A stretch of 64,000 nt of DNA, from positions 62,001 to 126,000 of IMG/VR virus record IMGVR_UViG_3300031997_000001; one strand, given 5' to 3'. Below the pieces are notes generated by a model. The model ran no database searches and had not been told where the DNA came from. It saw only the letters and a program-made list of their open reading frames with translations. Below are positions 5,617-48,941 of the stretch, piece by piece. The position numbers were made by a program, and so were the translations under genes. Position 1 is the stretch's first letter. Each line of letters opens with the position of its first letter.

Positions 5617-5626
5617 AGCCTATGTA

Positions 5627-12249: not shown

Positions 12250-12305
12250 ATGAATCTCCTGAGTTGATAACTTATATACTGTGCGTATGTTGTGCGTGGC
12301 GTGGT

Positions 12306-14809: not shown

Positions 14810-26026
<11,217 letters not shown>

Positions 26027-27153: not shown

Positions 27154-27505
27154 AGTGAGACTCCTACTTCTTTTGCAGCACCCACGAGCTTATCCAACCA
27201 TTGGGTAATTGTATATTGCTGCTTTCTGAGCCTGTAATTTTGGAAAATGATATATACTCTTCTGAGGGCTGAGCCTAATTCTTCCAGCTCCTGCTCCGAC
27301 AGGTGAGCATCCGATATGCGGAGCAGGAGCATGTTCCAGGTCTTGACCAGCAGCTCGCGGAAGAACAGATCGTCGGACCCCGGCGCTAGGGGTCCGACGA
27401 AAGTCTCTGTCACCACGTCCTTGAACAGGTACGTGAGCGCCGTGACGTCCTTGGCCTTCGCGCGGCCTTGGATGAATGCAACTATGGCTTCTGCACTGGC
27501 ACCGT
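27150..27505 (-). CDS. Hypothetical helical protein with uncertain start (GTG near 27413-27416, or joined to the upstream gene by a frameshift)
   Basis: Host-like codon usage extends up to about 27500, but there is no ATG/GTG start until about 27416. Confidence 0.6.
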
Positions 27506-27952
27506 AGGGTTTACGCCGGTCTTCTTGAAGACGGCAATGATGTCGTTGATCCGAGGCGCACCCTGCCGGAAGATGGCCTTCAGGACCATCTCGCCGAACG
27601 CCACGATAGCCGCCCACATCGTGGACGCCTCGAGCCAGGTCAGCGTATCAAGTGCGCTGCCCTTGCCGAGCCAGGCACCCACCGCGCCGAGGATCGCCCC
27701 GACCGCGGCAGTGATGACCATGTACTTGACGTCGAACGGCTGCTGGACGTCCGTGGCGATGTCGCGGTTCTTGAGCCAGCCGACGATCGCCGCGATGGCG
27801 CCGCCGAGGGCTCCCATCCCGATCTTGGACCAGATGCTGACGACCGCAGTGGCCGCAGCTCCGGGCGTCCCGGTCACGGCATCCGCGGCGAAGGCGACGA
27901 CCGACACCATCAAGAAAGCCAGAGCCAGCACCGGCAGCTTCACGTACCGCAT
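27482..27952 (-). CDS. Membrane protein, holin-like (signal-like N-terminus plus 2-3 hydrophobic helices)
   Basis: Hydrophobic Gly/Ala-rich segments IGMGALGGAIAAIVGWL, MVITAAVGAILGAVGAWL, WAAIVAFGEMVL; basic C-terminal tail. Confidence 0.6.
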   Translation of the reverse strand: MRYVKLPVLALAFLMVSVVAFAADAVTGTPGAAATAVVSIWSKIGMGALGGAIAAIVGWLKNRDIATDVQQPFDVKYMVITAAVGAILGAVGAWLGKGSALDTLTWLEASTMWAAIVAFGEMVLKAIFRQGAPRINDIIAVFKKTGVNPTVPVQKP

Positions 27953-27984
27953 GTCTCCCTCCCTGAAAAGAGAAAACCGAACAA

Positions 27985-28041
27985 GATATATTTTCTTACG
28001 GATCTGATCTGGGCTTGTTCCCTTCTCGCTTCAAATATATC
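27985..28041. promoter_or_regulatory. Divergent pair of AAATATATC motifs
   Basis: Minus copy at 27985-27993 faces the holin-like gene; plus copy at 28033-28041 faces the collagen 2 gene. Confidence 0.5.
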
Positions 28042-28063
28042 AGAGAGTTTGCAAAGGGCACAG

Positions 28064-31000
28064 ATGATACATTTCTCTTCTGGTACATCAACATCCACGG
28101 AGTCTCTTAATTTCTTACCGAATCCGGCGCTCTGTATCGTCATTGCGAATGACGGCTCTTATCCCATCCAGATAAGACTCAGGTCGAAGAACGGATTTGC
28201 CCTTCAGATCGTGCCGGTCAACTATATTCACAGGATTTCTACCCACGATCATTCTATCGGCATTCAGTCCATCACGGTCGTATCGTCGCATCCGACACCG
28301 TTCAGATTCTGGTGGTCTTCTGATCAGATAATAGAGCCTGCTCCCGAGACGACGAAAACGATAGGAAAATATGTCTTCGTGTTATTTCCCCCCAGCATCA
28401 TCGACGAGGCCAAGGCCAGTCCGTTAATGCCGATCCCCCAACAGCCGATCGGTCGCCAGGGACAACAAGGTTATCAGGGCCAGGGCTACGTCGGCAGAGA
28501 CGGCTGGCAGGGCAGGCAGGGCTGGCAGGGCCCAGTGACTGAGGGCATCCAAGGCCTACAGGGTTATCAGAGCTCTCCGGGCCAGCAGGGTCAGCAGGGC
28601 TGGCAGGGTTGGCAGGGTGTCGGAAACATCGGCGTCGATGGCATGCAGGGAATCCAGGGGCCTATTGGAGCCGGCTATCAGGGCCCCCAGGGCGGAGAAG
28701 GGCTTCAGGGTGGGCAGGGTTCACAAGGCTGGCAAGGGACAGGAGATCCGGGCCTACAAGGCCTCCAGGGTGATGCGGGCCAGCAGGGCTGGCAGGGTCA
28801 GCAAGGCCAGCAGGGTCAACAGGGCTGGCAGGGTTTTGGCGAACCCGGCCTTCAGGGCGTTCAGGGTCAGCAAGGCTGGCAGGGTCAGCAAGGCCAGCAG
28901 GGCGGTCAGGGCTGGCAGGGTGATGCCGGTACGCAGGGCCAGCAGGGTCAACAGGGTAGACAAGGACAGCAGGGCCAGCAAGGCCAGCAGGGCGGTCAGG
29001 GCTGGCAGGGTGATGCCGGTACGCAGGGCCAGCAAGGCAGGCAGGGCCAGCAAGGACAGCAGGGCCAGCAAGGCCAGCAGGGCGGTCAGGGCTGGCAGGG
29101 TGATGCCGGTACGCAGGGCCAGCAAGGCAGGCAGGGCCAGCAAGGCCAGCAGGGTCAACAGGGCTGGCAGGGTTGGCAGGGACTTCAGGGTCTGCAGGGC
29201 CGTCAGGGCCAGCAGGGCCAACAGGGCCAGCAGGGCGGTCAAGGTTGGCAGGGCCAGCAGGGTAGCCAGGGCTGGCAGGGCCTGCAAGGCCTGCAGGGTC
29301 TGCAAGGTCAACAGGGCCAGCAGGGCCAACAAGGTCAACAAGGTCAACAGGGTCAACAAGGTAGGCAGGGCCAGCAGGGCCAGCAGGGCTGGCAGGGCTT
29401 GGAGGGCTCGCAGGGTCTCCAGGGTTATCAAGGCCAACAAGGTCAACAGGGCCAACAGGGTCAACAGGGCTGGCAAGGCGGCGGCGGTCAGGGCTACCAG
29501 GGTCAGCAAGGCTGGCAAGGCTGGCAGGGCCCCATAGCGCCAAGCGGTGAGCAAGGTTACCAAGGCCTGCAGGGTCTCCAGGGTCAGCAAGGCTGGCAGG
29601 GTCCGTCGACTGAAGGCATACAAGGCCTCCAGGGTTATCAGGGCTGGCAGGGCCTACAAGGCTGGCAAGGCCCGTCGACGGAAGGCATACAAGGCCTCCA
29701 GGGCTATCAAGGTCAGCAAGGCCAGCAAGGCCAACAGGGCTACCAAGGCCAGCAGGGTCAACAGGGCCAGCAAGGTGGTCAGGGTTGGCAGGGTCCGGGA
29801 AGCGAAGGAACTCAAGGCCTTCAGGGTTTACAGGGCCTGCAAGGTCAGCAGGGCCAGCAGGGTCAGCAGGGTTGGCAAGGGCTCCAGGGCCTTCAGGGCA
29901 ATCAAGGACTCCAGGGCCAGCAAGGCCAGCAGGGTCAGCAAGGTCAGCAGGGCAGGCAGGGCCAGCAGGGCTGGCAGGGCCTCCAGGGTTTACAAGGTGG
30001 CCAGGGCCAGCAGGGCCAGCAGGGTCAGCAGGGTCAACAGGGCTGGCAGGGCTGGCAGGGACTTCAGGGCTTACAAGGCGTTCAAGGCCAGCAGGGCCAG
30101 CAGGGCTGGCAGGGTCTTGAGGGCTGGCAGGGTCTTCAGGGTCAACAGGGCCAGCAGGGCCAGCAAGGTGGTCAGGGTTACCAGGGTTATCAGGGTCAGC
30201 AGGGTCTTCAGGGTCAGCAAGGTCAACAGGGCTGGCAAGGTAGCGGCGGTCAGGGTTACCAGGGCCAGCAGGGCTGGCAGGGCTGGCAGGGTGCCATAGC
30301 GCCTAGTGGTGAGCAAGGCTATCAAGGCCTGCAGGGCCAGCAGGGCCAGCAGGGTTGGCAGGGTCCGTCAACAGAGGGCATCCAGGGCCTTCAGGGATAT
30401 CAGGGCCAGCAGGGTCAGCAGGGCTGGCAGGGTCCGTCAACAGAGGGAATTCAAGGCCTTCAAGGATATCAGGGCTGGCAGGGCTATCAGGGCCAGCAGG
30501 GCCAGCAGGGCCAGCAAGGTCAACAGGGCGTTCAGGGCCAGCAGGGTCAGCAAGGCCAGCAGGGCCAGCAAGGGTACCAGGGTCTTGGGGGCCTGCAGGG
30601 TCTACAGGGCGTTCAGGGCCAGCAAGGTTGGCAGGGTTGGCAGGGTTATCAAGGCCAGCAGGGTCAGCAAGGCCAGCAGGGCCAACAAGGTTTGCAGGGT
30701 TGGCAAGGACTACAGGGCATTCAGGGCGATGCTGGCACAAGCGCCGGCATGATCCTCTATTTCGACACCGGCGCCAGCGACATAATCACTCCAAAGACTG
30801 GTCCTTCAACGCAGATCTCATTCGCCAATACGAATCCTGACACGATCGTCCGCGGCGATGGCGGCAGCTTCCTTACTGATCTCTGGGTTGCCCGCCAAAA
30901 GGTGAAGGTCACTAATTCGGCCTCTAACAACAGTACATTCCCGATTGCATCCGTGGCAGCCGGTGCTCTAACCCTGTCTGACGCATCGGCGCTCAACATA

Positions 31001-34000
31001 GAAGGAGAAGGGGCAAACGTCACCCTCACCGTCGATAACGAGAAGCTATCTCGTCTGCCGCCGGCGGCTGGTGAGATTGATGAGTCTCAGAGCGTGACCA
31101 GCGCGGACGTGAATGGCGTCCCGATTGACAACTACATCACCGTAGCGACAGTCCCGGGTCAGCTGACAATCCCGGCTGGGGTCTGGGAATTCCACTGCTA
31201 CCATTACGTCGCGGTCGGGTCAGACACGTACTTCAAGTACGAGATCTGCAAGAGGGACACGATCACTGGCATTACGACTGTCATCGATACGACTGGCCCG
31301 ACCGACAACGTGGCGAATGCCGTTACTAGATATGACGTTCAGTGGGTAGTGGCGGCGCCGGTTACGCTCTTGACTACCGACCGGATTGTCGTACGTGTTC
31401 TTGCCTTCACTTCGAGCGCTGCGGCTAGGGCAGCCCACTTCGTCTACCAGGGCAGTTCTCATGCGTCCTGGATCCTGACATCCTTCGGAATTATTCCACC
31501 TCAGGGAGCCCAGGGCTGGCAGGGGCAACAGGGCCAGCAAGGTCAGCAAGGTCAGCAGGGTTGGCAAGGTCTTCAGGGTCTACAAGGCGTACAGGGCCAG
31601 CAAGGTCTTCAAGGTCAGCAGGGCTGGCAGGGCCAACAAGGTCAGCAGGGCTGGCAGGGCCAGCAAGGCTGGCAAGGCTGGCAAGGGCTCCAAGGACTTC
31701 AGGGCCAGCAGGGTCAGCAAGGTCAGCAGGGCCAGCAGGGCTGGCAAGGCCTTCAGGGTCTGCAGGGTGTCCAAGGTCAGCAGGGTCAGCAAGGTCAGCA
31801 GGGCCAGCAAGGCTGGCAAGGCTGGCAAGGGCTCCAAGGACTTCAGGGCCAGCAGGGTCAGCAAGGTCAGCAGGGCCAGCAAGGCTGGCAAGGCTGGCAA
31901 GGGCTCCAAGGACTTCAGGGCCAGCAAGGTCAGCAGGGCCTGCAAGGCGTGCAAGGACTCCAGGGCCAGCAAGGCGTCCAAGGGCAGCAAGGTCAGCAGG
32001 GCCAGCAGGGCTGGCAAGGCCTTCAGGGTCTGCAGGGTGTCCAAGGGCAGCAAGGTCAACAGGGGCAGCAGGGTTGGCAAGGCCTGCAGGGACTCCAGGG
32101 TTATCAAGGATTCCAGGGTCAGCAGGGCCAGCAGGGTGTACAGGGTCAGCAGGGCGGCCAGGGCTGGCAGGGCTGGCAGGGACTACAAGGTAGTCAGGGC
32201 GGGCAGGGTAATCAGGGTTGGCAAGGCCAGCAGGGCTGGCAAGGCGTACAAGGCCAACAGGGCCAGCAAGGGTTCCAGGGCGGTCAAGGCTGGCAAGGTT
32301 GGCAGGGTAATCAGGGTTGGCAAGGTCTTGAGGGCCTTCAGGGACTTCAAGGCCAGCAGGGCCAGCAAGGGTTCCAGGGGCAGCAGGGTTGGCAAGGCCT
32401 GCAGGGACTCCAGGGTTATCAAGGATTCCAGGGTCAGCAGGGCCAGCAGGGTCAGCAAGGCTGGCAAGGCCTCCAGGGTTTACAGGGTCAGCAGGGTCAG
32501 CAGGGCTGGCAAGGAGCATCGGCAGAGGGCATACAGGGTCTGCAGGGTTTCCAGGGTCAGCAGGGTCTGCAGGGCGGCCAGGGTTGGCAGGGTCCCGGAA
32601 GCGAAGGGACTCAGGGCTATCAAGGTCAGCAGGGCCAGCAGGGCCAGCAGGGTCAGCAGGGTTGGCAAGGACTCCAGGGTCTGCAGGGTCTGCAGGGCTA
32701 TCAGGGTCAACAAGGCCAACAAGGCACTCAGGGCCAGCAGGGTGTTCAGGGCCAGCAGGGCTGGCAGGGCTCTGTTGGTGATGGTATTCAGGGCCAGCAA
32801 GGCCAACAAGGTCAGCAGGGTCAGCAGGGTTGGCAAGGACTCCAGGGTCTGCAGGGTTATCAGGGCCAGCAGGGTCAACAAGGCCAACAGGGCCAACAGG
32901 GCGTCCAAGGTCAGCAGGGCCAGCAAGGTGGTCAGGGTTGGCAGGGTTGGCAGGGCTGGCAAGGGCTCCAGGGCCTTCAGGGTGTTCAAGGTCAGCAGGG
33001 TCAACAGGGCCAGCAGGGTCAACAGGGTCAACAGGGTCAGCAAGGCCAGCAGGGCTGGCAAGGCGCTGTTGGCGAAGGCGTACAGGGATTCCAAGGTCTT
33101 CAAGGCGTTCAGGGCCAGCAGGGACAGCAAGGCCAGCAGGGTCAGCAAGGCCAGCAGGGCTGGCAGGGTTCTGGTGGCGATGGCCAGCAGGGCATGCAGG
33201 GTCAACAGGGCATGCAGGGCCAGCAGGGCTGGCAGGGTTCTGGTGGCGATGGCCAGCAGGGCCTTCAGGGTCAACAGGGCATGCAGGGCCAGCAGGGCTG
33301 GCAGGGTTCTGGTGGCGATGGCCAGCAGGGCCTTCAGGGTCAACAGGGCATGCAGGGCCAGCAGGGCTGGCAGGGTTCTGGTGGCGATGGCCAGCAGGGC
33401 CTTCAGGGCCAGCAAGGTCAGCAGGGTGGCCAAGGCTGGCAAGGACTCCAAGGACTGCAAGGTGCACAGGGTTGGCAGGGTCCTACTGCCGAAGGCGTGC
33501 AAGGCCTACAGGGTAGCCAAGGCCAGCAGGGCTGGCAGGGTTCTGGTGGCGATGGCCAGCAGGGCCTGCAGGGTGTACAGGGCCAGCAGGGCCAGCAGGG
33601 CCAGCAGGGTGTGCAGGGCCAGCAAGGTCAGCAAGGATGGCAAGGACTTCAGGGCCAGCAGGGCCAGCAAGGCCAGCAGGGTGTGCAGGGCCAGCAAGGT
33701 CAGCAAGGATGGCAAGGACTTCAGGGCCTGCAGGGTGTGCAAGGCCAGCAGGGTGTGCAGGGTCAGCAGGGCCAGCAGGGCCAGCAGGGTTGGCAGGGCT
33801 GGCAAGGACTTCAGGGCCTGCAGGGTGTGCAGGGCCAGCAGGGCCGGCAGGGACAACAAGGCCAACAAGGCGTTCAGGGCCAGCAGGGCTGGCAAGGACT
33901 CCAAGGCCAGCAAGGTGCGCAGGGCTGGCAGGGTCCAACTGCCGAAGGCGTGCAAGGCCTACAGGGCGTGCAAGGCCAGCAAGGTGCGCAGGGCTGGCAG

Positions 34001-34663
34001 GGTCCAACTGCCGAAGGCGTGCAAGGCCTACAGGGTAGCCAAGGCCAGCAGGGTCAGCAGGGCTGGCAGGGCCGGCAAGGCCAGCAGGGTTATCAAGGCT
34101 TCCAAGGCTACCAGGGCGCTCAGGGCGTCCAGGGCCGGCAGGGCTTCCAAGGTCTCACACAAGGATCGTCATTTATTCTGGGAGCGGCTGGCGGATGGGC
34201 ATCGACAACGAATGGATGCACCGGACCGAATCGTACCGAATTGACTACGAGTAAGTTGAACTATCAGTGTTTGGAATTCGTGCAGGCTGCACAGAAGTAT
34301 GCTGAGTGGACCTGTTATTTGCCAGCGAACTATACTGCGGCGGCAACTATTACCGCGAAATTTATATGGGCCTGTGCAAATGCATCAACCAACAGTGTGG
34401 TGTGGGGTTGCTCGGCGAACTCTTACACAGATGGCGACCCGTTTGATATGACTTTCTCGGCGGGAGTTGAAGTGACGGATGCAAACAACGCGGATAAAGA
34501 CATAAATATCTCTGCCGCTACGGCGGCAATCACGATCAAGCAAGCAGCAAGTTCCCCTGCTGCTGGGCAATTGCTGCACATCAGGGTTTATCGGCTGGGC
34601 AGTGGAGCGGATAACTTAGCTGCATCGGCTTGTCTGCTTCAGGTCATCATTACCTACACATAG
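28064..34663 (+). CDS. Second giant collagen-like fibre protein (about 2199 aa): two Gly-X-Gln segments separated by a globular domain, plus a C-terminal globular domain
   Basis: Start reassigned to MIHFSSG, since the upstream part of the track ORF is antisense to 27482..27952. GXQ regions about 28450-30730 and 31500-34160. Confidence 0.88.
28450..30730 (+). repeat. Gly-X-Gln coding repeat, segment A (about 760 aa)
   Basis: 9-nt periodic GGN-NNN-CAR. Confidence 0.95.
31500..34160 (+). repeat. Gly-X-Gln coding repeat, segment B (about 885 aa), including a 69-bp near-perfect tandem repeat at 33167-33400
   Basis: Unit GSGGDGQQG(M/L)[13 protein letters not shown] starts at 33167, 33236, 33305 and (partial) 33374. 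Confidence 0.95.
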
Positions 34664-34671
34664 GCTGAGTT

Positions 34672-35793
34672 ATGGCAGATCTTGGTGCGTCTCCAGTCAC
34701 GATCAGCGCCACTGCGGCGTACACCATCCCGCTTGGGGTGTACTCACTTCAGGTCGAATGCCAAGGTGGTGCGGCGGCGGGCTCGAATGGTCCGGGAGTA
34801 GCCAAGAGGTCCGGTGGAGGTGGAGGGGGAGGAGCCTATTCGAAGAGGGCGGCAATCAGGGTCATTCCGGGAAAATCATATACATTCACAGTCGGGGTTG
34901 CTGTTGCTGCGGCGTCCCAAAGCAACGGAAACCCGACTACGTTTACTGGAGAGGACGCCGTCGCCTGCACAGCGGCTGGAGGAACTTGTCCTGCGAATCT
35001 TACCACGGGAGGCGCGGGTGGCGCTGTTGTGGCATCTGTTGGGGATGCCGGTGCGATTTTCGCTGGTGGTGCTGGAGGAAATGGATCAACCACCAGCGAT
35101 CAGGGCGGCGGGGGTGGAGGAGAAGGCGCGTATCAAGCGACAGGAAATATTGGACAAAATAACGTAGGAGCAACCGGAGGGGCTGGCGGAACCGGATTGG
35201 CGGGTGGTGGTGACGGCGGAAAGGGAGGGAACAACACGGCTGGCGGTAGTGACGGTGTTGCCCCCGGTGGTGGAGGTGGAGGTGCCGGTGGAAGCAACGA
35301 CTCGGGTGGTGCCGGGGCGACGGGACAGATCATTGTTACTTACACGACCAACGTGACCAGGTCCTTCGGCGGTGGGTATGCTTCTCCGGGCTCGATGGGA
35401 TTCTCACTTCTTCTGGGCCTTCTGGGTCGGTTCTTCTGCAGCCTTTGCTCCGCCAGCAAAGAAATCCCGGATTTCCTGAGCCTGCTCGACGCCTGCGCTA
35501 AAGAGTTCGGGCACGTCAACGTGGGACCCGACGGCGACTACTCCCAGGCCAGCGCAATGATGGAATTCGAACGTCGGGTGCATGACCTTCGCCTCTTCAA
35601 AGAAGCGAGAAACCCCGAATTCTGGATGGACGACTCTCGTGTCGTGAAGCAGTACGATTCCCTGATTGGACATCTTCCCGACCCACTCCCGAAAGTCGTG
35701 CTTCACCGCATCATAGGTATGAAGCCCGTCGATGTGAAGGATGTCGATGTCAGACGGCACCTGGTACGCCGCGGCATCAAAAGTGCAGCGTAA
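34672..35793 (+). CDS. Glycine-rich virion/tail-associated protein whose 3' end runs antisense over the next gene
   Basis: VECQGGAAAG..GGGGGGGAYSKR..GGAGATGQIIVTY is the common phage Gly-rich domain; the last about 130 codons overlap 35404..36114. Confidence 0.75.
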   Translation: MADLGASPVTISATAAYTIPLGVYSLQVECQGGAAAGSNGPGVAKRSGGGGGGGAYSKRAAIRVIPGKSYTFTVGVAVAAASQSNGNPTTFTGEDAVACTAAGGTCPANLTTGGAGGAVVASVGDAGAIFAGGAGGNGSTTSDQGGGGGGEGAYQATGNIGQNNVGATGGAGGTGLAGGGDGGKGGNNTAGGSDGVAPGGGGGGAGGSNDSGGAGATGQIIVTYTTNVTRSFGGGYASPGSMGFSLLLGLLGRFFCSLCSASKEIPDFLSLLDACAKEFGHVNVGPDGDYSQASAMMEFERRVHDLRLFKEARNPEFWMDDSRVVKQYDSLIGHLPDPLPKVVLHRIIGMKPVDVKDVDVRRHLVRRGIKSAA

Positions 35794-36114
35794 GAGCTGG
35801 GAGAAGTCGGCGTATTGCTGGTGTGTCGAAAGTAATACGGGGAAGATTCCGTCATAAGGTCCGGTAAAGGCGTCTCCCTTCCAGGTATCCACTCCCCAGC
35901 AACGCGCGGCAAGCCTCAAATATTTTACGGCCTGGCAGAACGCCAGATAGGACCCGCCCTGGAACACGCCCAGCTCGACTATCTTCCCGGGTCTCGTGCG
36001 CTCTACCAGCCACCTCGCGAACGGGATGTGCCCGTACCAGGAGCTCGCATCGATGTTATGCTGGAGTGGGAGGTGGACGGCGTAGGCGGGATGGCCGACG
36101 TAGGGGAGGTTCAC
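35404..36114 (-). CDS. Class I SAM methyltransferase (Methyltransf_24-like)
   Basis: IVELGVFQGGS, WGVDTWKGD, IDILHIDGLHTYDAVKHDF, GIVLLHDT. Confidence 0.88.
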   Translation of the reverse strand: MNLPYVGHPAYAVHLPLQHNIDASSWYGHIPFARWLVERTRPGKIVELGVFQGGSYLAFCQAVKYLRLAARCWGVDTWKGDAFTGPYDGIFPVLLSTHQQYADFSQLLRCTFDAAAYQVPSDIDILHIDGLHTYDAVKHDFREWVGKMSNQGIVLLHDTRVVHPEFGVSRFFEEAKVMHPTFEFHHCAGLGVVAVGSHVDVPELFSAGVEQAQEIRDFFAGGAKAAEEPTQKAQKK

Positions 36115-37150: not shown

Positions 37151-38080
37151 CTAGGCCAGGTTATGACAACATGTGCCTCGTATGTGCTTGCTAAAATTGC
37201 AGTTGAAGCACATGACCTGATAACCTGGAGGATAATGGCGCTTTATTAGTAAACGATAAAAGTGACTACCGCCGCCTCCGCATTTCTTTCTGTCTGCGGC
37301 GCCATTACCATGAATATGATCAACAGACAAAACATCCATGTCGTCAGCTCCACAACAAACGCACTTGCCATCACCATAGTGATACATAACATTCGCCTTC
37401 ATAAGTGCATGATATTCCGATCTACGGTGTGCGGAGAAGTGCATTTTTATATTGCAATTGTGGCACAATAAGCGTAGATCTTTCGGAAAGCTGTTTTTTA
37501 CGATCCAGCGATACAACCTCAAACCGCGCATGTTGTGTTTTCGCCTTTGCTCGCCACCATTGCTAGTGGTATGATCAATGGCCAGGAAGTCCGGATGTTT
37601 TTCACCACAAACAACGCATTTATCTCCGTAATATTGAAGTATGGTGCCGCGTAGCCTATTCTTATCCGCGACATATTGCACGTGCTTGATATGTGCACGA
37701 GTGTGAACGTACTTTAGGGAGCACTTGATGCAAGTAGGGGCGCGGCCATCATTGCTGGCGTCTTTCTTGTGAAACTGAGTCAGTCGTAATGATCGGCCAC
37801 ATTTGTTGCATTTCTTGGTAGCCTTGTGGTTCTTCCTTTGACATGCTTTACAAGTGATCGATTTTATTCCGCTACGCGTCCGGATGACCAACGAATGGAA
37901 TCGGGTGTTTCCACATCTACACTTGCCGCCAAGCGAACGGATGAGTGCAGCTTTTCTCTCGAAAAACGCCCTGCTGCTTCTCTTTGTCGCAATACCATGG
38001 CATTTCTTACAGCACGCGTACCCTTCATAAAACTTGCCAATGTCAAGCTTCAGCAAGCATTTTGTGCATTTCTTAAGCAT
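37151..38080 (-). mobile_element. HNH homing endonuclease-like gene with zinc fingers and tandem HNH domains
   Basis: YGDKCVVCGE..LAIDH..LLCHNCN and YGDGKCVCCG..LSVDH..VMCFNCN; CxxC fingers; AT-rich codon usage. Confidence 0.85.
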
Positions 38081-41000
38081 TCTTGATGAAATCCAGGTCT
38101 TGATGGGCTGTATTGGTATAGATCATTGTGATTTTGTCAGATATGACGCATGGTTCATCTTTCCACCTTGAAACGAACTCGAAGTCATGGCTATAAGAAG
38201 CTTCGGTCCTGTCTTTCCAGAATCCAAATTTTCTCACAAGCCATTTCTTGTGCATCACGGCTGATGTATCCACCCTATATAGTCTTGGCTTGTCGCAGAT
38301 TATATCTACGGATTTAGATCCGTCTGGTTCAACCATCCTAAAGGACCCAAGCGCATAGCTGAAATTCCCACTACTTATTTTTGCATAAAGAGACGACAAA
38401 TGATCTGGTGTATAGATACAATCGTCGTCAAGATAAGCAATGATCTGTCCGGCCGCGTGCATTATTCCGTAATTACGTGGTATAGCCCCGCCGGCCCCAT
38501 GGTTGGTCGGCAGGTTATAGGCGCGGACCTGCGTGCTCAAGACGCCCATCCAGTCTTCCACTTTCAACGATGGGCACTTGTCCCCGACGATAATGACTTC
38601 GAGGTTCGTGTAGTCCTGGGCGAGGATCGAATAGACCGCCTTCTTGAGCAGCTCAGGCCGGTCGTATGTCGGGACGACGACGCTGACCAGCGGCCCGCAG
38701 AAGACCTTCTTGATCCGGTCGTCGTCCAGCCTATCGTAGTCCAGGATAGGCCACTCGGCCCGCACTTTCGCCTTGTAGTCCGCGTCCGTGAAGTAGGGCT
38801 CTGCGGCCATCAGCTTCGAGTAGAAGTCCTCGATGCCGGTCCGCCTCTTCTGATCGTGGAGAACGATCATGTGGCTATTCATCGCGTTCTTGACGAGGAC
38901 TTGGTTGGGCGAACCGATGAGCTTTTCGTGAACCTTGAACGCCCACCTAATGCTCTTCTTGCACCGATAGGCGATAGGCTTCGGGACGAATGTGCGGATC
39001 GATCCGTCCGGATAGACGGCCTGGAGCGGCGAGAGCACGATATCTGCGGCGGTGGACGCCAGGAACTCCCGCAGGTTCTCGATCGTGTGCTGGTCTAGAC
39101 GTTCGTCCGGATCGATCATGACGACCCAGTCGCCCTCGCTGGCGAACTTGTCGGTCGCCATGTTCCTGGCCGTGGCGAAGTCGAAGTTGCGTCCGATGCC
39201 CGTCTCATCGAAGCGGCTACAGTGGACGCCGATGTTCCTGGCCTTCTCTACCGTCTTGTCGCCGGAGCCGGTGTCCAGCATGTGCCAGTCCAGGCTCACG
39301 GATCCGAACTGCTGGAAGTAGCCCTCGATCGAGGCTTCCTCGTCCTTGGCGATGCAGACGATCTTGATCCTCGGGTGCAGCTTCTCATATTTCTGTCGGT
39401 TCGTGTCCATGACTTCATAGACGTTCTTGCCAAGGGCCTGGAACGTCGCATGGCGTTCGTGATTGATCCAGGTACTGGCTACGACCTTGCACTTGATCTT
39501 CTGGGTGCGGGCGCGAGCACAGAAGTCGTCGTCCTCATAAGTCAGCAGGCGCGTGTCGAATCCGCCGATCTTCCAGAAATTGGCCGTCGTCATCATCATG
39601 CAGATGCCGACAACGGCTTCCGGCTCTATATCCGTCGATGGCGTAGCTTCCCTCGGGAGGTCGCCCTGAGGCGGCTTGGCTCGGTTGCAGAAGGGGGCAG
39701 CGATGAAGCCCTCGGAGGCGGCCTTGGCCAGGCGCTGGACGGAGTCGTCGACGAATTCGGCGTCGTCGTTCATGAAGCAGATCATCGGGCGGCTGGCAAA
39801 TCCGGCGCCGTGGTTGCACCCCGCAGCATAACCGATGTTCGTCTCGAGCTTGACGATTTTATCCGCGAGCTTCTGTTCCGCCTCAGTGACCTCGCACCCG
39901 TTGGCGACGAGGATCGTCTCCGAATTCGCGGCGTTAATCTTGATCGACCGCAGGCAGCGCTCGACCAGGAAGTTGTGGCTCGGATTGTGTACGGCCTTGA
40001 GCACGACATAGCTTACATCCCTGGCAGTCATGGCGCTGGAGCCAGTCTGGGTCGTATTCTCGATGTTAAAGTTGTAGTGGTAGAGCGCCCGTTCGATCCG
40101 GACCTGCTTGTCGACGTGTTCCCTCATCCGGATGGACCAGTCGACGTCCTCGGCGACCTGCATTTCCTTGAACTCGCAGCGCCGGGCCAGCTCGGTCCTG
40201 TGGACCATGAGATGGTTCGGCATGCGCTGGAAGATCTCTGGGTCCTTGTTGGAATTGGGGTATTCCTTGCCGTACTTGCAGATCTTATCCTTGCCGCCGG
40301 CGTATCCGTGGACCACCGTGTCAAAAACGACGACGTCCACGCCAGGGTTCTTGCTTATGGCGTCCAGGATGGCATCGACATAATCCGGTTCCACCCTGTC
40401 GTCGTCGTCCACGAAGCAGATGTACTTGCCCTTGGCCTGCTTGACGATCAGGTTTCTCTTCTCGCCGACCTTGCTGACCTTGTTGTCCAGGATGCTCAGG
40501 ACCTCGACGGACTTGCCTTCCGCCTGCTTGACCAGGTCCTCGATGACGTCAGAGTATGACGTCCGGACGCGCGGGGGGATGCCGCAGACGCCGATGGTCA
40601 GCGTGATCTCCTTCTTGACGACAGGATTCAGGCGGTTGTGGTTGACGACGGCGAATTCCTGCAGGTAGAACTGCTGACCATACGCGAGGTGCTGCTGAAT
40701 GGACAGATTCTTGGTGAACGTCGTATTCGTCCAGTTGTCCCGGAACCGGTAGTAGTAAAGCGGCTTGTCGATGTGCAGGCACTTCGACCGCAGGAAGAAC
40801 TTGGCGTAGACGTCCCAGTCGTCTGCGACGGGGATGTTCTGGTTATACCCGCCCAGCTCCCTGAACGTGCGAGCCCTGTAGGCCCTGACGTGGTTGGGGC
40901 CGACCGTCAGGAACCAGCCAAACTGCTGGGTGAAGTGAGGGCCAAACCTATCATAGATGTCTGGGTTGATGCATTCCAGCATCTTCTTGCCGCGATATTC

Positions 41001-41765
41001 GACCCACCTATACTTGGACTTCCAGAAGTCGTCCATGAACTGGTGCGGCTGCCCGTTCTCGAAGTAATTGAACGAGTTCGAGTAGACCATGCCGACTTCC
41101 GGGTCGGATTCGAAGCCCTTCTTCACCTCGTCAAGGCAAGTTTCCATCAGCATGTCGTCGTGGTCCAGCTCGACCAGATATTCGCCGTTGCACAGCCTCG
41201 TGGCCATGCACTTCATCCCGCCGATCTTGCCACAGGGCTTTCCATTTCTATAGGGCCGGACGCGGATGTCTTCCTTTGCGAATTCCTGCAGCTTCTCCCA
41301 GGTGCCATCCGATGAACAGTCGTCGACGACGACCCATTCCCAGTTGTTGTAAGTCTGATCCTTCAGGGACTGATAAGTCTCCCGCAAGTAATCCCCTGTG
41401 TTGTAGGTCGGCGTATAGACGGAGATAAGCGGGTTGTATTTCTGGTTGACGTGCGAACCCCAGACACTGCCGGCGTAGCACTCTTCGATGACCCTTACGA
41501 CGTCATCTATCTTGGCATTCACGTCGACGTTGATCCACTTCTTCCGGATCTCGAAAGCGGACAGATTGAGCGCGCCGGGGATGAAAGTAGAGGTGAGGAT
41601 GACATCCGGCTGGAACTGGGCTATCGTCGATAGGACGTTCGTGGCGTCATCGATATGCTTGACGTTGTAGAGCTTACAGCCCTTATGGGGTACATCCTTC
41701 GTCTCTATGACCGGCAAGTCCCATGGCTTGCCGACCGTCAGGATCTTGACGCCCTGGGTTGCCAT
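38073..41765 (-). CDS. Multi-domain glycosyltransferase with five GT2-like domains (1230 aa)
   Basis: ISVYTPTYN..ELDHDD; LTIGVCGIP..FVDDDD; VSYVVL..FMNDDA; IVCIAKDEE..IDPDE; VSVVVPTYDR..YLDDDC. Confidence 0.88.
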   Translation of the reverse strand: MATQGVKILTVGKPWDLPVIETKDVPHKGCKLYNVKHIDDATNVLSTIAQFQPDVILTSTFIPGALNLSAFEIRKKWINVDVNAKIDDVVRVIEECYAGSVWGSHVNQKYNPLISVYTPTYNTGDYLRETYQSLKDQTYNNWEWVVVDDCSSDGTWEKLQEFAKEDIRVRPYRNGKPCGKIGGMKCMATRLCNGEYLVELDHDDMLMETCLDEVKKGFESDPEVGMVYSNSFNYFENGQPHQFMDDFWKSKYRWVEYRGKKMLECINPDIYDRFGPHFTQQFGWFLTVGPNHVRAYRARTFRELGGYNQNIPVADDWDVYAKFFLRSKCLHIDKPLYYYRFRDNWTNTTFTKNLSIQQHLAYGQQFYLQEFAVVNHNRLNPVVKKEITLTIGVCGIPPRVRTSYSDVIEDLVKQAEGKSVEVLSILDNKVSKVGEKRNLIVKQAKGKYICFVDDDDRVEPDYVDAILDAISKNPGVDVVVFDTVVHGYAGGKDKICKYGKEYPNSNKDPEIFQRMPNHLMVHRTELARRCEFKEMQVAEDVDWSIRMREHVDKQVRIERALYHYNFNIENTTQTGSSAMTARDVSYVVLKAVHNPSHNFLVERCLRSIKINAANSETILVANGCEVTEAEQKLADKIVKLETNIGYAAGCNHGAGFASRPMICFMNDDAEFVDDSVQRLAKAASEGFIAAPFCNRAKPPQGDLPREATPSTDIEPEAVVGICMMMTTANFWKIGGFDTRLLTYEDDDFCARARTQKIKCKVVASTWINHERHATFQALGKNVYEVMDTNRQKYEKLHPRIKIVCIAKDEEASIEGYFQQFGSVSLDWHMLDTGSGDKTVEKARNIGVHCSRFDETGIGRNFDFATARNMATDKFASEGDWVVMIDPDERLDQHTIENLREFLASTAADIVLSPLQAVYPDGSIRTFVPKPIAYRCKKSIRWAFKVHEKLIGSPNQVLVKNAMNSHMIVLHDQKRRTGIEDFYSKLMAAEPYFTDADYKAKVRAEWPILDYDRLDDDRIKKVFCGPLVSVVVPTYDRPELLKKAVYSILAQDYTNLEVIIVGDKCPSLKVEDWMGVLSTQVRAYNLPTNHGAGGAIPRNYGIMHAAGQIIAYLDDDCIYTPDHLSSLYAKISSGNFSYALGSFRMVEPDGSKSVDIICDKPRLYRVDTSAVMHKKWLVRKFGFWKDRTEASYSHDFEFVSRWKDEPCVISDKITMIYTNTAHQDLDFIKNA

Positions 41766-42061
41766 CAGTTCTTCCTGTGAATGATGCCATCCGCTTCCTT
41801 GATCTCGTCCTTCATCTTTCTAAATTCCTTGACGGCGAGCAGATGCGTATCCTCGTAGCAGTTGGTGATAGGGAATATCTTGGGTATGATGGCGAATCCG
41901 CGCTGTTCCGAGATGATCCGCTTCACTATGTTTTCTGCCTGCCTCTGGGTCTGCGTAATCCCGCCGATGAACGGCCCCTTGAAGTCCACGCCGCTCTTGC
42001 GGCGTATGTTGGACAGCTTGAGGTACATCACTAGGTACTTATCTTGATCGGTTATTTTCAT
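41765..42061 (-). CDS. Hypothetical protein
   Basis: 98-aa ORF overlapping both neighbours. Confidence 0.7.
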   Translation of the reverse strand: MKITDQDKYLVMYLKLSNIRRKSGVDFKGPFIGGITQTQRQAENIVKRIISEQRGFAIIPKIFPITNCYEDTHLLAVKEFRKMKDEIKEADGIIHRKN

Positions 42062-42639
42062 CGTCCACTACTCCCAAAACCGTCCGTGCCGCGTTCGGTC
42101 TTTGGAAGCTCATCGACGCCGACGATCTCGATGGGATGGCCAGTGAGGGGTGTCCTCTTTACGAGAGACGCCTCGTCGCCGTCCGTGTAATTGGGAATGT
42201 TTTCCTGCGCTTCCCAGACCATGAATTTCGGGATGATAATGAGCTGCGCCAGCTTCTCGAATTCCTTGACGCGCACCGTCTCAGCGTTCGGGTTCTTGAC
42301 CAGGACGTAGAGCGGGCCGGTGAAGCCTGTGTCGATGACGCCTTCGTAGACCACGAGGTGGCGCTTCCAGCCAGTGCTGGACCGCGGCTTAATGTTGCCC
42401 CAGGAGTGCTCTGGGACCTTGACGGCCATTCCGCATGGGACTTCTGCGATGCCCATGGGCGGAATGTCGAACCATCGTTCCTTCCAGTCGATGTAATAGT
42501 CCTTATGTGGCGCGATTTTCAGCTTGTCTGTCATGACCACTGGCAGATCAAGCCCGACGTCGTTCGCCTTGGCGTACTTCAGGACGAACCCGGCCTTTTT
42601 CAGTTCCTCGTCGTACTTGACCTGGAGCCTGTTGTGCAT
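42058..42639 (-). CDS. dut: Trimeric dUTPase
   Basis: Motifs I-V: VGLDL, KPRSS, GVIDTGFTG, AQLII, RGTDGFGSSG. Confidence 0.93.
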   Translation of the reverse strand: MHNRLQVKYDEELKKAGFVLKYAKANDVGLDLPVVMTDKLKIAPHKDYYIDWKERWFDIPPMGIAEVPCGMAVKVPEHSWGNIKPRSSTGWKRHLVVYEGVIDTGFTGPLYVLVKNPNAETVRVKEFEKLAQLIIIPKFMVWEAQENIPNYTDGDEASLVKRTPLTGHPIEIVGVDELPKTERGTDGFGSSGR

Positions 42640-47991: not shown

Positions 47992-48941
47992 AACCAGGGG
48001 CGCTTCCTTTTGAGGCCGAACGATTCGTGCTCGCAGAGCCAACTCATTATTTTTGTAGCATTCGCGCATCCACTTATGTTCAAGTAATATATACTTTGTT
48101 TTACCAAGGATTTCTTGGTTATCTTAAAACCCGCCTGGCGTAGGATGTACAAGAATTTTACCAAAATAGCCTTATATCGGCAGCACCACATCATCTTATA
48201 CGCAACTTTTGTTTTTTTTCTGTGCGCCCGATAACAGGAACCATCTCCGTCCAAATAACCGCGCAAGAAATCGTTCTTGAACGGAATCTTTCCGATGGGA
48301 ATAGCATTGCCGGCTTTTATCTGCAAGAAACCATGCTTTATGAGATCGGTACAGATTTGTATGGATCCCATGCGCAACATCGCAGTCTTTGTATTCTTTT
48401 TGAAAGGGGTATCATATTCATAAAATCCTATTTTATTCGACGATTTGAGATCATATTGGAGAGCCTCAAGAATGCATTTGTCTTTTAATGCCAAGTGGAT
48501 AGACAGATGCCTGCGCTTGCTCACTCCTGCCGGAATGCTCCCATCTGCACAAAGAAATCCAAACCAATAGCATTTCCTGGGAGTATCCAAATCTTTAAAG
48601 AAAGTAACATTGGCAGTTTTCCTTGCTGGCGGATTTCGCAATTTTATTCCGATTTTGCACAATCTTTCTCTCAACGTTGTGTCATCAACGCCAAAAGAGC
48701 TGGAGATTCTACCAAGGCTTTCACCTCGTTTATAGCGTCGCGCCGCTTCCAGCACGTCTTTTGGTTTTAATTTGCTGATCTGCAGATAGATGTCTCGTCT
48801 TGGGATTCTTTCTCTCTGCAGGAGCCTGTAGACTCCAGCTATTGAACAGTGCATCGCTTTTGCGGTTCTTGGTCCGGTTAAACCTCCTACATAGAGACTT
48901 ATTATCTTCTGTTTTTCTTCTGGCGAAAAGGGTGCTACCAT
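47976..48941 (-). mobile_element. Free-standing LAGLIDADG homing endonuclease with N-terminal HTH repeats
   Basis: YWFGFLCADGS and FLRGYLDGDGS motifs; AT-rich. Confidence 0.9.

What the first reader, a model, noticed from the sequence alone, without database searches (positions are those of the whole stretch)
38073..41765. Single polypeptide with five tandem GT2-like domains
Seen: five separate Rossmann-start plus DxD-like blocks (ELDHDD, FVDDDD, FMNDDA, IDPDE, YLDDDC) behind a small N-terminal domain. Established: multi-domain GTs such as chlorovirus A064R/A111-114R and bacterial WsaE/WbdA add successive sugars. Inference: an assembly-line enzyme for a defined oligosaccharide; five domains of one family is unusual.
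Basis: partly seen in the sequence, partly recalled or inferred. Interest (0 to 1): 0.62.

Follow-up and report, generated by a model that had tools for sequence, protein, structure and literature searches.

The report
Five-domain glycosyltransferase of a jumbo phage
A 235-kb sediment phage encodes one soluble 140-kDa protein with five different, apparently active sugar-adding domains; it belongs to a large, undescribed family in huge phages that swaps modules and usually sits next to giant collagen-like fibre genes.

Summary
Window 38073-41765 (-) is one intact 1230-aa ORF. It has a small N-terminal alpha/beta domain followed by five GT2 (GT-A) domains. Each domain passes Pfam's cut-off, matches solved GT-A enzymes and keeps an invariant acidic motif across homologues. 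The AlphaFold model has mean pLDDT 90.6.

The five domains share only 14-26% identity, so they are not recent duplicates.

The protein is not a singleton. At least 120 homologues lie on contigs of up to 512 kb and share a core N-D1-[slot]-D3-D4-D5. The slot is empty or holds D2, another GT-A domain, methyltransferases, or combinations, giving 4-6 GT domains. Five is therefore neither unique nor the maximum.

The phage also encodes GDP-mannose 4,6-dehydratase, a sugar C-methyltransferase, several other methyltransferases, three GT4 domains and six further GT2 genes.

The new finding is a genomic link. Collagen-like (Gly-X-Gln) ORFs lie within 10 kb of the gene in 8 of 10 independent family loci, against 2 of 44 and 2 of 65 control loci.

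My best reading is a cytoplasmic multi-step enzyme that builds a defined oligosaccharide on a phage structural protein, possibly the collagen-like fibres. The acceptor and the sugars are inferred, not shown.

The parts
38073..41765 (-). Complete gene for the 1230-aa multi-glycosyltransferase (140.6 kDa, pI 6.25, no transmembrane segment).
   Evidence: The start agrees with the conserved N-termini of the homologues.
41442..41765 (-). N domain, aa 1-108. A small alpha/beta (flavodoxin/CheY-like) domain without the phospho-acceptor Asp. Function unknown; docking or oligomerisation is guessed.
40620..41441 (-). D1, aa 109-382. GT2/GT-A domain with motif E199-L-D201-H-D203-D204 and an invariant D315-D316-x-D318.
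40038..40610 (-). D2, aa 386-576. GT2/GT-A domain with motif D453-D456 and an invariant E539-D540. It is the accessory module that is present, absent or moved to the C-terminus in relatives.
   Evidence: PF00535 scores 36.5 bits, and phrog_14775 gives 1e-33. The PDB profile search gives 5e-8 to GalT1 and 1e-7 to TarS. D2 is 31% identical (E 5e-20) to the N-terminal GT of Che8 gp108.
39375..40028 (-). D3, aa 580-797. GT2 plus Glyco_transf_7C-type GT-A domain with motifs N666-x-D668 and E744-D745-D746.
38706..39374 (-). D4, aa 798-1020. GT2/GT-A domain with motif D885-x-D887-E888 and an invariant H946-E947-K948.
   Evidence: PF00535 scores 29 bits, and phrog_13126 gives 1.7e-17. The PDB profile search gives 2.3e-17 to GmaR (flagellin O-GlcNAc transferase) and about 1e-8 to SunS and ThuS (peptide glycosyltransferases).
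38076..38705 (-). D5, aa 1021-1230. GT2/GT-A domain with motif D1113-D1114-D1115 and an invariant D1166-T-S.
   Evidence: PF00535 scores 81 bits. The PDB profile search gives 4.8e-21 to K4CP, 6.7e-20 to 9jma and 2e-18 to GalT1.
35404..36114 (-). Stand-alone Methyltransf_24 gene in the same co-directional gene row. In relatives the same domain type is fused into the multi-GT protein.
   Evidence: PF13578 scores 72 bits. Fused versions in homologues are shown.
27476..34663 (+). Giant collagen-like ORF (up to 2395 aa; the true start is uncertain). It has about 457 Gly-X-Y triplets with Y = Gln in 94%. It is a candidate acceptor or functional partner, by linkage only.
14810..26026 (-). Giant collagen-like ORF (3738 aa). 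It has about 600 triplets with Y = Gln in 96%, followed by about 1500 aa of Gly/Ser/Ala/Val-rich non-collagen sequence. It is a candidate acceptor or partner, by linkage only.
   Evidence: No Pfam family matches the C-terminal 1563 aa.

Best explanation
The gene encodes a soluble, cytoplasmic enzyme of about 140 kDa. A small receiver-like N domain is followed by five different GT-A (GT2) catalytic domains, and each of these appears able to bind a nucleotide-sugar and a metal ion. During infection the domains add different sugars one after another, so that one polypeptide builds most of a defined hetero-oligosaccharide. The donors are partly made and tailored by the phage itself, which encodes GDP-mannose 4,6-dehydratase, a sugar C-methyltransferase and several methyltransferases of types used for sugar O-methylation. 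The acceptor is most likely a phage structural protein. The recurrent linkage to giant Gly-X-Gln collagen-like fibre genes makes those fibres, or a protein assembled with them, the leading candidate. The slot between D1 and D3, and the C-terminus, accept alternative GT or methyltransferase modules. This would change the glycan from phage to phage.

Shown here: the domain anatomy, the conserved motifs, the family and its modularity, and the linkage.
Inferred: catalytic activity, sequential action, and the identity of donors and acceptor.
For: Anatomy:
- Five PF00535 stretches all exceed the cut-off.
- Every domain matches solved GT-A enzymes by profile search.
- The AF2 model has mean pLDDT 90.6, with low confidence only at the linkers 381-384 and 574-576.

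Competence:
- All five acidic motifs, plus a second downstream acidic motif in each domain, are invariant in 36 homologues of 50-55% identity.

Different specificities:
- The domains share only 14-26% identity.

Location:
- The protein has no transmembrane segment.

Protein-acceptor hints:
- D4's best solved relatives are GmaR, SunS and ThuS.
- D3's best structural matches are polypeptide GalNAc-transferases.
- D2 is homologous to Che8 gp108, from a phage whose capsid and tail tube are glycosylated (PMC12363180).

Donor supply in the same genome:
- gmd scores 430 bits.
- A Methyltransf_13/14 C-methyltransferase, a triple methyltransferase and two GT4 genes lie in the window.
- The genome has five Methyltransf_24 domains and 13 GT2 stretches.

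Linkage:
- A collagen-like ORF lies within 10 kb in 8 of 10 dereplicated family loci and 9 of 21 stand-alone N-D1 loci, against 2 of 44 and 2 of 65 controls (Fisher p 1.8e-6 and 3e-4).

Modularity:
- Alternative modules occupy the slot.
- The core tree requires at least 30 changes of slot state, and well-supported branches alone force at least 8.
Against: - There is no biochemical or proteomic evidence.
- The collagen repeats of this phage have Gln at 94-96% of Y positions, with almost no Thr or Lys. The two known collagen glycosylation chemistries (Thr-O as in BclA, hydroxylysine-O) therefore have few sites in the helix. No hydroxylase was found: PF20043 and PF13640 are both absent.
- In this window the collagen genes lie downstream, one convergent and one 12 kb away, not directly upstream as in the relatives.
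- Apart from the collagen-like ORFs, no neighbour is conserved.
- The controls for the linkage come from other, mostly smaller phages and from bacteria, and phage lineages are not independent samples.
- Similarity of D3 and D4 to protein-glycosylating enzymes lies mainly in the nucleotide-binding half, which does not set acceptor specificity.
- No homologue of Che8 gp110, the transferase reported as essential for capsid glycosylation, was found in the protein.
- pTM is 0.58, so the mutual arrangement of the domains is not defined.
Confidence: 0.5

Rival explanations
1. The enzyme remodels the host cell envelope. It would elongate or decorate a host lipid-linked or wall-linked polysaccharide (O-antigen, capsule, teichoic-acid-like polymer) during infection, for example to block superinfection by other phages. 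In this it would resemble soluble multi-domain O-antigen polymerising transferases.
For: Iyer et al. proposed this role for glycosyltransferase clusters of jumbo phages (PMC7824862). D1, D2 and D5 resemble enzymes acting on polymeric or lipid-linked acceptors: K4CP, heparosan synthase, TarS, TarP, RmlT and PglI-like 9jma. PHROG hits are labelled GtrB-like O-antigen conversion.
Against: The protein has no membrane segment or amphipathic anchor. No initiating phosphoglycosyl transferase, flippase or ABC exporter was seen among the window genes scanned. The family is essentially confined to phage contigs; only 2 MAG contigs turned up among the 79 loci returned by a scan of one genome for each of 185,579 bacterial and archaeal species. 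The gene lies among structural genes: a tail-fibre-like gene, Tail_P2_I and the collagen-like fibres. This hypothesis does not predict the collagen linkage.
Confidence: 0.2
2. The protein glycosylates hypermodified bases in phage DNA, building an oligosaccharide on hydroxymethylated pyrimidines to evade restriction.
For: A dUTPase/dCTP-deaminase-like gene lies two genes upstream (42058-42639), and a Mom-like protein lies 15 kb away. D2 has a weak hit to the beta-glucosyl-HMC alpha-glucosyltransferase PHROG (E 0.0045). Phage glycosyltransferases that hypermodify DNA with diverse glycans are known (cited in PMC12619734).
Against: The 97%-complete genome has no thymidylate-synthase-like hydroxymethylase. 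The best relatives of all five domains act on proteins or polysaccharides. A five-step glycan plus methylation on DNA bases has no precedent that I know of. The hypothesis does not explain the collagen linkage.
Confidence: 0.05
3. Only some of the five domains are catalytic. The others would be retained as structural, carbohydrate-binding or scaffolding modules, so the protein would add fewer than five sugars.
For: D2, D3 and D4 are weak Pfam matches (29-37 bits). D3 has N-x-D instead of D-x-D in most homologues. D2 is dispensable in about half of the family.
Against: Every domain keeps its acidic motif and a second downstream acidic motif invariant at 50% overall identity. Mean column identity is similar in all domains, at 56-66%. 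N-x-D or N-D-D variants are compatible with active GT2 enzymes; this last point is from general knowledge and was not tested here.
Confidence: 0.15
4. The enzyme makes a free or secreted oligo- or polysaccharide, or glycosylates a small molecule or peptide, rather than a virion protein.
For: D4's relatives SunS and ThuS glycosylate small peptides. D1 and D5 resemble polymerases such as K4CP.
Against: No precursor peptide or exporter was recognised nearby among the genes scanned. Five different domains fit a defined oligosaccharide better than a repeating polymer. The hypothesis does not explain the collagen linkage.
Confidence: 0.1

Closest known systems
Chlorovirus PBCV-1 multi-domain glycosyltransferases A064R (two GT domains plus a methyltransferase) and A111/114R (three GT domains) (PMC7826918; PMC9614988)
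   Same: Both are virus-encoded and soluble, carry several different GT domains in one polypeptide and sometimes a methyltransferase module. In both cases the virus also encodes GDP-mannose 4,6-dehydratase; for PBCV-1 this is from my own knowledge. In both, glycosylation is independent of host machinery.
   Different: No detectable sequence relationship was seen; no PBCV-1 protein is named among the top 50 BFVD matches. This protein has five (in the family, 4-6) GT2 domains instead of 2-3. The host here is a bacterium. The chlorovirus acceptor is the capsid protein Vp54 (N-linked), whereas the acceptor here is unknown.
Actinobacteriophage virion-glycosylation genes (Che8 gp108-110, Corndog gp38; Gordonia phage two-domain GTs)
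   Same: D2 is homologous to the N-terminal GT of Che8 gp108 (31% identity, E 5e-20). D2-D3 together match two-domain Gordonia and Mycobacterium phage GTs (26-29% identity over aa 384-803). gp108 also appears to carry a C-terminal methyltransferase-like half (a G-x-G-x-G-type motif in the alignment).
   Different: Those phages use separate one- or two-domain proteins. No counterpart of Che8 gp109 or gp110 is detectable in this protein. Their acceptors are the C-termini of the capsid and tail-tube proteins, as cited in PMC12619734; no collagen linkage is reported for them.
Bacterial two-domain GT2 polymerases (E. coli K4 chondroitin polymerase K4CP, Pasteurella heparosan synthase) and multi-domain O-antigen transferases (WbdA, WbbB, WsaE)
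   Same: These have tandem GT-A domains in one soluble chain. K4CP is the best solved match of D1 and D5.
   Different: Those enzymes have two to three domains and make repeating polymers on lipid or oligosaccharide primers. This protein has five mutually divergent domains and is phage-restricted. In Flavobacterium loci the matching GT2 units are separate genes of about 300 aa.
Protein and peptide glycosylating GT2 enzymes: Listeria GmaR, Bacillus SunS/ThuS, animal polypeptide GalNAc-transferases
   Different: Identity is only 11-14% for D3. D3 and D4 have no TPR, lectin or peptide-binding appendages. Acceptor specificity cannot be read from these matches.
Collagen glycosylation systems (Bacillus exosporium BclA; Mimivirus L230 with collagen-like proteins; animal LH3/GLT25D1). 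This comparison is from my own knowledge.
   Same: Genes for collagen-like proteins and glycosyltransferases occur together. In some related phage loci a DUF6445 gene lies between the collagen ORF and the N-D1 transferase gene, and Lys fills 23-24% of the Y positions.
   Different: In this phage Y is almost always Gln, and no hydroxylase or DUF6445 gene is present. The enzymes belong to other GT families (GT25 and LH3).

Membership tests
GT2 / GT-A fold glycosyltransferase (each of D1-D5) | A match to Pfam PF00535 above the gathering score, for every domain scanned alone. | tested here: met
   scores of 95.1, 36.5, 33.0, 29.0 and 81.2 bits against a cut-off of 23.3.
GT2 / GT-A fold glycosyltransferase (each of D1-D5) | A DxD-type acidic motif after the fourth strand of the nucleotide-binding half, conserved in relatives. 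| tested here: met
   D201/D203/D204, D453-D456, N666/D668, D885/D887/E888 and D1113-D1115 are invariant in 36 sequences. D3 has N-x-D in most members.
GT2 / GT-A fold glycosyltransferase (each of D1-D5) | GT-A three-dimensional fold. | tested here: met
GT2 / GT-A fold glycosyltransferase (each of D1-D5) | Glycosyl transfer from a nucleotide sugar (activity, inverting mechanism, catalytic base). | not testable with these tools
   Only candidate bases can be named, as invariant residues: D315/D316/D318, E539/D540, E744-D746, E947 and D1166.
Huge-phage N-D1-[slot]-D3-D4-D5 multi-glycosyltransferase family (defined here) | The same domain order, with each domain orthologous across members. | tested here: met
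   37 of the 121 proteins (the query included) have exactly N-D1-D2-D3-D4-D5, and those aligned are 50-56% identical to the query (one is 93%). The core N-D1...D3-D4-D5 is present in about 110 of the 121 proteins.
Chlorovirus A064R / A111-114R type | Sequence or structural orthology to the PBCV-1 proteins. | tested here: not met
   No PBCV-1 A064R or A111/114R is named among the top 50 BFVD matches. Other multi-GT proteins of giant viruses match at only 8-15% identity. The resemblance is architectural.
Chlorovirus A064R / A111-114R type | Builds the glycan of the major capsid protein. | not testable with these tools
   There are no virions or proteomics, and the capsid gene was not identified here.
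Actinophage virion-glycosylation set (Che8 gp108-110) | Homologues of all three transferases, including gp110, reported as essential. | tested here: not met
   The gp108 N-terminal domain matches D2 (E 5e-20). gp109 and gp110 give no significant match (E 1.3 and 0.18).
Collagen glycosylation system (hydroxylysine-type or BclA Thr-type) | A collagen-like substrate gene linked to the transferase. | tested here: met
   8 of 10 family loci against 2 of 44 and 2 of 65 controls.
Collagen glycosylation system (hydroxylysine-type or BclA Thr-type) | Acceptor residues (Lys or Thr at the Y position) and, for the Lys type, a hydroxylase. | tested here: not met
   In this window Y is Gln at 94-96%, with Thr and Lys near 0. 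PF20043 and PF13640 are absent from the genome.
DNA base glycosyltransferase system | A pyrimidine hydroxymethylase (thymidylate-synthase family) in the genome. | tested here: not met
   PF00303 has no match in the 97%-complete genome.
CheY-like receiver domain (N domain) | Receiver fold. | tested here: inconclusive
CheY-like receiver domain (N domain) | The phospho-acceptor Asp at the end of strand 3 and the acidic pair after strand 1. | tested here: not met
   Alignment A3 shows 'P-D-V-I-L-T-S', with Thr58/Ser59 where the Asp would be, and Gly12-Lys13 after strand 1.

The most novel reading that the evidence does not exclude
Huge phages carry a dedicated one-polypeptide glycan assembly line. 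Its N-D1 module is specifically coupled to giant Gly-X-Gln collagen-like fibres, so these phages would coat or decorate very long collagenous fibres with a phage-made, methylated, 6-deoxyhexose-containing oligosaccharide. Swapping of GT and methyltransferase cassettes in one slot would diversify that glycan between phages. This would be a bacterial-virus counterpart of the glycosylated fibrils of giant viruses. Because the helix has almost no Thr or Lys, it might involve a protein-glycan linkage chemistry not seen in known collagens.
Probability: 0.3. Interest if true: 0.8.

Novelty: new variant of a known kind. Interest (0 to 1): 0.62.

Why it matters
Virus-encoded, host-independent glycosylation is well documented for chloroviruses and mimiviruses, and only recently for a few mycobacteriophages. 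This locus shows that many uncultivated huge phages carry a much larger apparatus:
- a conserved chain of four to six transferase domains with exchangeable modules;
- donor-sugar synthesis and methylation genes;
- a recurrent association with collagen-like fibre genes thousands of residues long.

If the glycan sits on virion fibres, it would bear on host recognition, on protection of the particle, and on antigenic diversity of phages in sediments.

The protein is also a natural, soluble, modular scaffold of five GT-A catalysts. It could be dissected domain by domain and is of interest for glyco-engineering.

Tried and rejected
- Nucleotide search of 10 kb around the gene against GenBank phages found no match.
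- Conserved synteny by blastp of 19 non-collagen neighbours against eight family loci found nothing useful. The gene immediately downstream is an HNH homing endonuclease, not a partner.
- The Freeman et al. 2023 paper is not held, so it is cited only through PMC12363180, PMC11256854 and PMC12619734.
- Profile search of the N domain against PDB sequences found nothing significant.
- A mucin-like Ser/Thr-rich acceptor was sought in the genome, and none was convincing.
- For DUF6445, a PDB sequence search and a literature search were uninformative, and the family is absent from this genome.
- A prolyl-hydroxylase-type 2OG oxygenase is absent.
- Apparent very long multi-GT2 matches in Flavobacterium genomes are rows of separate genes of about 300 aa, not fusions.
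- Literature searches for a description of this family found none.

Not done:
- The exhaustive representative-protein search was not used, because the word search already gave more than 170 relatives.
- Read laying and complex prediction were not used. No RNA run holds the sequence, and an enzyme-substrate contact is a poor case for the complex test.

Full report
**What is there**

Window 38073-41765 on the minus strand is one uninterrupted ORF of 1230 codons with an ATG start.

| Motif | Residues |
|---|---|
| ELDHDD | 199-204 |
| FVDDDD | 451-456 |
| FMNDDA | 664-669 |
| IDPDE | 884-888 |
| YLDDDC | 1111-1116 |

Pfam's GT2 model PF00535 matches in five separate stretches. When the protein is cut into pieces, every piece passes the 23.3-bit gathering score on its own:

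| Domain | PF00535 bits |
|---|---|
| D1 | 95.1 |
| D2 | 36.5 |
| D3 | 33.0 (plus Glyco_transf_7C at 25.4) |
| D4 | 29.0 |
| D5 | 81.2 |

The first 108 residues match nothing in Pfam or PHROGs. The protein is 140.6 kDa with pI 6.25. Its most hydrophobic 19-residue window scores 1.38, so it has no membrane segment.

**The genome**

The window is bases 62001-126000 of a 235,458-bp IMG/VR virus record estimated 97% complete. Near-identical DNA occurs in at least 15 sediment metagenome runs, and no RNA run holds it. Nothing similar at nucleotide level is in GenBank phages. Phage character is clear from several genes:
- a tail-fibre-like gene;
- a Tail_P2_I domain;
- homing endonucleases;
- a Mom-like protein;
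- a dUTPase-like gene.

**Are all five blocks real GT-A domains with catalytic residues?**

Yes, as far as sequence and modelling can tell.

A word search found 174 relatives. Thirty-five full-length relatives (34 at 50-56% identity, one at 93%) were aligned with the query. Both the acidic motif and a second downstream acidic motif are invariant in every domain:

| Domain | Acidic motif | Downstream motif |
|---|---|---|
| D1 | E199/D201/D203/D204 | D315-D316-x-D318 |
| D2 | D453-D456 | E539-D540 |
| D3 | N666/D668 | E744-D745-D746 |
| D4 | D885/D887/E888 | H946-E947-K948 |
| D5 | D1113-D1115 | D1166-T-S |

Mean column identity is similar across domains, at 56-66%.

Profiles of each domain hit solved GT-A enzymes:

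| Domain | Best solved matches |
|---|---|
| D1 | K4 chondroitin polymerase 2.7e-31 |
| D2 | GalT1 5e-8, TarS 1e-7 |
| D3 | GalT1 1.8e-10 |
| D4 | GmaR 2.3e-17, SunS and ThuS about 1e-8 |
| D5 | K4CP 4.8e-21, 9jma 6.7e-20 |

An AlphaFold2 model of residues 1-1200, built with a 72-sequence alignment, has mean pLDDT 90.6. Low confidence is confined to a loop at 21-28 and the two linkers 381-384 and 574-576. pTM is 0.58, so the relative domain placement is uncertain.

**The domains are not copies of one another**

Profile-profile comparison gives only 14-26% identity between any two domains. Some pairs are barely detectable: D2-D4, D3-D4 and D4-D5 have probability below 40%. The protein is a fusion of five old GT2 lineages. 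That is what one expects if each makes a different linkage.

**The N domain**

The conserved 'P-D-V-I-L-T-S ... P-G' stretch resembles the strand-3 region of receivers. However, Thr/Ser stand where the phospho-acceptor Asp would be, and there is no acidic pair after strand 1.

I treat it as a receiver-like pseudo-domain of unknown role. It occurs once in the genome, and in every protein examined here it directly precedes a D1-type GT2 domain.

**A large modular family**

I built an HMM for each of the six segments and scored the query and the 120 listed homologues, 121 proteins in all. The core order N-D1-[slot]-D3-D4-D5 holds in about 110 of them.

| Architecture | Count |
|---|---|
| Slot empty (four GT domains, about 1000 aa) | 37 |
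| Slot holds D2 (as here) | 37 |
| Slot holds another insert of 200-630 aa | 23 |
| D2 appended at the C-terminus instead | 10 + 2 |

The inserts are Glyco_tranf_2_5, Glyco_tranf_2_5 plus Methyltransf_24, Methyltransf_11, or Glyco_tranf_2_5 plus Methyltransf_24 plus another GT2. The largest proteins, P0109 (1645 aa) and P0088 (1703 aa), have six GT domains plus a methyltransferase.

On a FastTree of the concatenated core, the slot state changes at least 30 times, against a shuffled mean of 58.6. Well-supported branches alone force at least 8 changes. This is an approximate tree, and recombination was not examined.

Five GT domains is thus neither unique nor the maximum.

Many members lie on contigs of 190-512 kb. 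One member is in UniProt as an unnamed 'Glyco_tranf_GTA_type domain containing protein' of an uncultured Caudovirales phage. In a scan of one genome for each of 185,579 bacterial and archaeal species, the family appears only on two MAG contigs among the 79 loci returned, as X-D4-D5 variants. The long Flavobacterium matches are rows of separate GT2 genes of about 300 aa. I found no paper describing the family.

**The phage's sugar toolkit**

The genome has 13 PF00535 stretches. Five are in this ORF; the other eight lie in seven further ORFs, one of which (the Anp1/GT2-like gene) matches only weakly. It also has:
- three GT4 domains;
- five Methyltransf_24 domains;
- a GDP-mannose 4,6-dehydratase at 430 bits, above the equivalog cut-off of 415.

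Several further genes follow the 3738-aa collagen-like gene on the same strand within the window:
- an Anp1/GT2-like gene;
- a GT4 interrupted by an intein;
- a second GT4;
- a protein with three class-I methyltransferase stretches;
- an NDP-sugar C-methyltransferase (Methyltransf_13/14, 139 bits).

A stand-alone Methyltransf_24 gene (35404-36114) lies in the same co-directional row as the five-domain gene. It is the same module that relatives carry fused.

**What is the acceptor?**

*DNA.* This is unlikely, because the genome has no thymidylate-synthase-like hydroxymethylase.

*Host envelope.* This cannot be excluded, and Iyer et al. proposed it for jumbo-phage GT clusters. But the protein has no membrane anchor. 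No initiating transferase or exporter was seen among the window genes scanned. The family is phage-restricted.

*Protein.* Three hints point this way:
- D4's closest solved relatives glycosylate proteins or peptides: GmaR, SunS and ThuS.
- D3 looks most like polypeptide GalNAc-transferases.
- D2 is 31% identical (E 5e-20) to the N-terminal GT of Che8 gp108. Che8 is a phage whose capsid and tail tube are glycosylated by its own enzymes (PMC12363180; PMC11256854).

These similarities lie mostly in the donor-binding halves, so they are hints only. Che8 gp109 and gp110 have no counterpart here.

**Linkage to collagen-like genes**

The two largest ORFs of the window are collagen-like.

| ORF | Length | Gly-X-Y triplets | Y = Gln |
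|---|---|---|---|
| 14810-26026 (-) | 3738 aa | about 600 | 96% |
| 27476-34663 (+) | up to 2395 aa | about 457 | 94% |

Searching the records of relatives showed collagen-like ORFs next to the homologous GT genes.

I then scanned all fetched loci for ORFs with runs of at least 12 Gly-X-Y triplets and dereplicated them by shared 17-mers:

| Locus set | Loci with a collagen-like ORF within the 10-kb flanks |
|---|---|
| Multi-GT family | 8 of 10 |
| Stand-alone N-D1 genes | 9 of 21 |
| Phage loci fetched through D2 / D2-D3 relatives | 2 of 44 |
| Bacterial GT2 loci | 2 of 65 |

Fisher's test gives p = 1.8e-6 for the family loci and 3e-4 for the N-D1 loci, each against the D2 / D2-D3 set.

In most relatives the collagen ORF is upstream on the same strand. 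Examples are L066 (2054 aa, ending 1 kb before the GT gene), L067 (1677 aa) and L060/L062 (6-7 kb away). In this window one collagen ORF is convergent, 3.4 kb away, and the other lies 12 kb downstream on the same strand. Gln dominates the Y position in nearly all of these ORFs, at 30-96%.

Caveats:
- The control loci come from different, mostly smaller phages and from bacteria.
- Phage lineages are not independent.
- No other neighbour is conserved.
- This phage's helices offer almost no Thr or Lys, and no hydroxylase was found.

If the fibres are the acceptor, the sites are more likely in the non-collagen parts, or the chemistry is unknown.

**Verdict**

The interpretation as a multi-step sugar-adding enzyme is the most economical reading and is supported by conserved catalytic motifs in all five divergent domains. 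It is not demonstrated.

The protein is a member of a widespread, undescribed, modular family of huge-phage glycosyltransferases. It is embedded in an extensive phage-encoded glycosylation system and is statistically linked to giant collagen-like fibre genes.

It works like the chlorovirus multi-domain transferases, but it is not their homologue. It shares one domain lineage with the mycobacteriophage virion-glycosylation genes.

I rate it a new variant of a known kind and of moderate to high interest. The interest lies chiefly in the family, its cassette-like variation and the collagen linkage, not in the count of five.

Noticed in passing
window 14810-26026 (-) and 27476-34663 (+): Two giant collagen-like ORFs of 3738 and up to 2395 aa, made of Gly-X-Gln triplets with X mostly Gln, Leu or Trp. 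These are the only Pfam Collagen matches over the cut-off in the 235-kb genome. Many long ORFs in other frames and on the opposite strand of these repeats (for example 19810-25974 +) are by-products of the repeat composition. The N-terminal roughly 200 aa of the second ORF overlap gene 27150-27617 (-), so its true start is probably further downstream.
   Followed up: partly
window 9184-11580 (-): A 798-aa GT4 glycosyltransferase is interrupted by an intein (Hint_2, LAGLIDADG_3 and Intein_splicing, roughly aa 250-707). I have not seen an intein reported in a glycosyltransferase gene before.
   Followed up: no
window 4402-8823 (-) and 11593-12642 (-): A sugar-tailoring cluster lies downstream of the 3738-aa collagen gene. 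It comprises an NDP-sugar C-methyltransferase type (Methyltransf_13/14), a 557-aa protein with three class-I methyltransferase stretches, a GT4 and a weak Anp1/GT2-like gene.
   Followed up: partly
G000:C1:2620-3591 (+) and 5515-6744 (+) (outside the window; L231): The phage encodes GDP-mannose 4,6-dehydratase (430 bits, equivalog cut-off 415) and a nicotinate phosphoribosyltransferase (465 bits).
   Followed up: partly
window 37151-38080 (-) and 47976-48941 (-): An HNH endonuclease (phrog_2255) overlaps the 3' end of the five-GT gene by 8 nt. A LAGLIDADG-plus-HTH protein lies 6 kb upstream. Homing elements are frequent in this region.
   Followed up: no
L021 8355-11176 (also L013, L015, L017, L010, L012, L030, L057, L009, L018): In phages with a 'stand-alone' N-D1, the gene is really about 600-620 aa, with about 230 extra N-terminal residues. 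It is preceded by a conserved gene of about 310 aa for a DUF6445 protein, which in several of these loci (for example L021, L013, L015, L017) follows a collagen-like ORF of up to 1853 aa. In L013, L017 and L021 that ORF has Lys at 23-24% of Y positions. This trio recalls collagen, hydroxylase and glycosyltransferase, but the nature of DUF6445 could not be established here.
   Followed up: partly
L158 3900-6098, L164 18-1475, L165 1-1626: In Thermoactinomycetaceae genomes (Marininema, Thermoactinomyces, Croceifilum), D2-like GT2 genes lie within 8 kb of Gly-Ala-Thr or Gly-X-Thr collagen-like genes. From my own knowledge this resembles BclA-type exosporium glycoproteins.
   Followed up: no
window 56292-57857 (+): A 521-aa protein combines a Mom-family domain (80 bits) with a weak REase_MTES_1575 match. 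It suggests DNA modification unrelated to the glycosyltransferase.
   Followed up: no
L060 12599-17134 (+): In a 426-kb contig the family member is followed by a second multi-domain transferase of 1511 aa with alternating GT2 and GT4 domains. It is preceded by three single GT2 genes and two methyltransferase genes.
   Followed up: no
L062 1193-7513 (+): Nine tandem Laminin_G_3 genes of about 230 aa lie between a collagen-like ORF and the family member in a 212-kb contig. A Peptidase_C14 (caspase-like) gene follows it.
   Followed up: no
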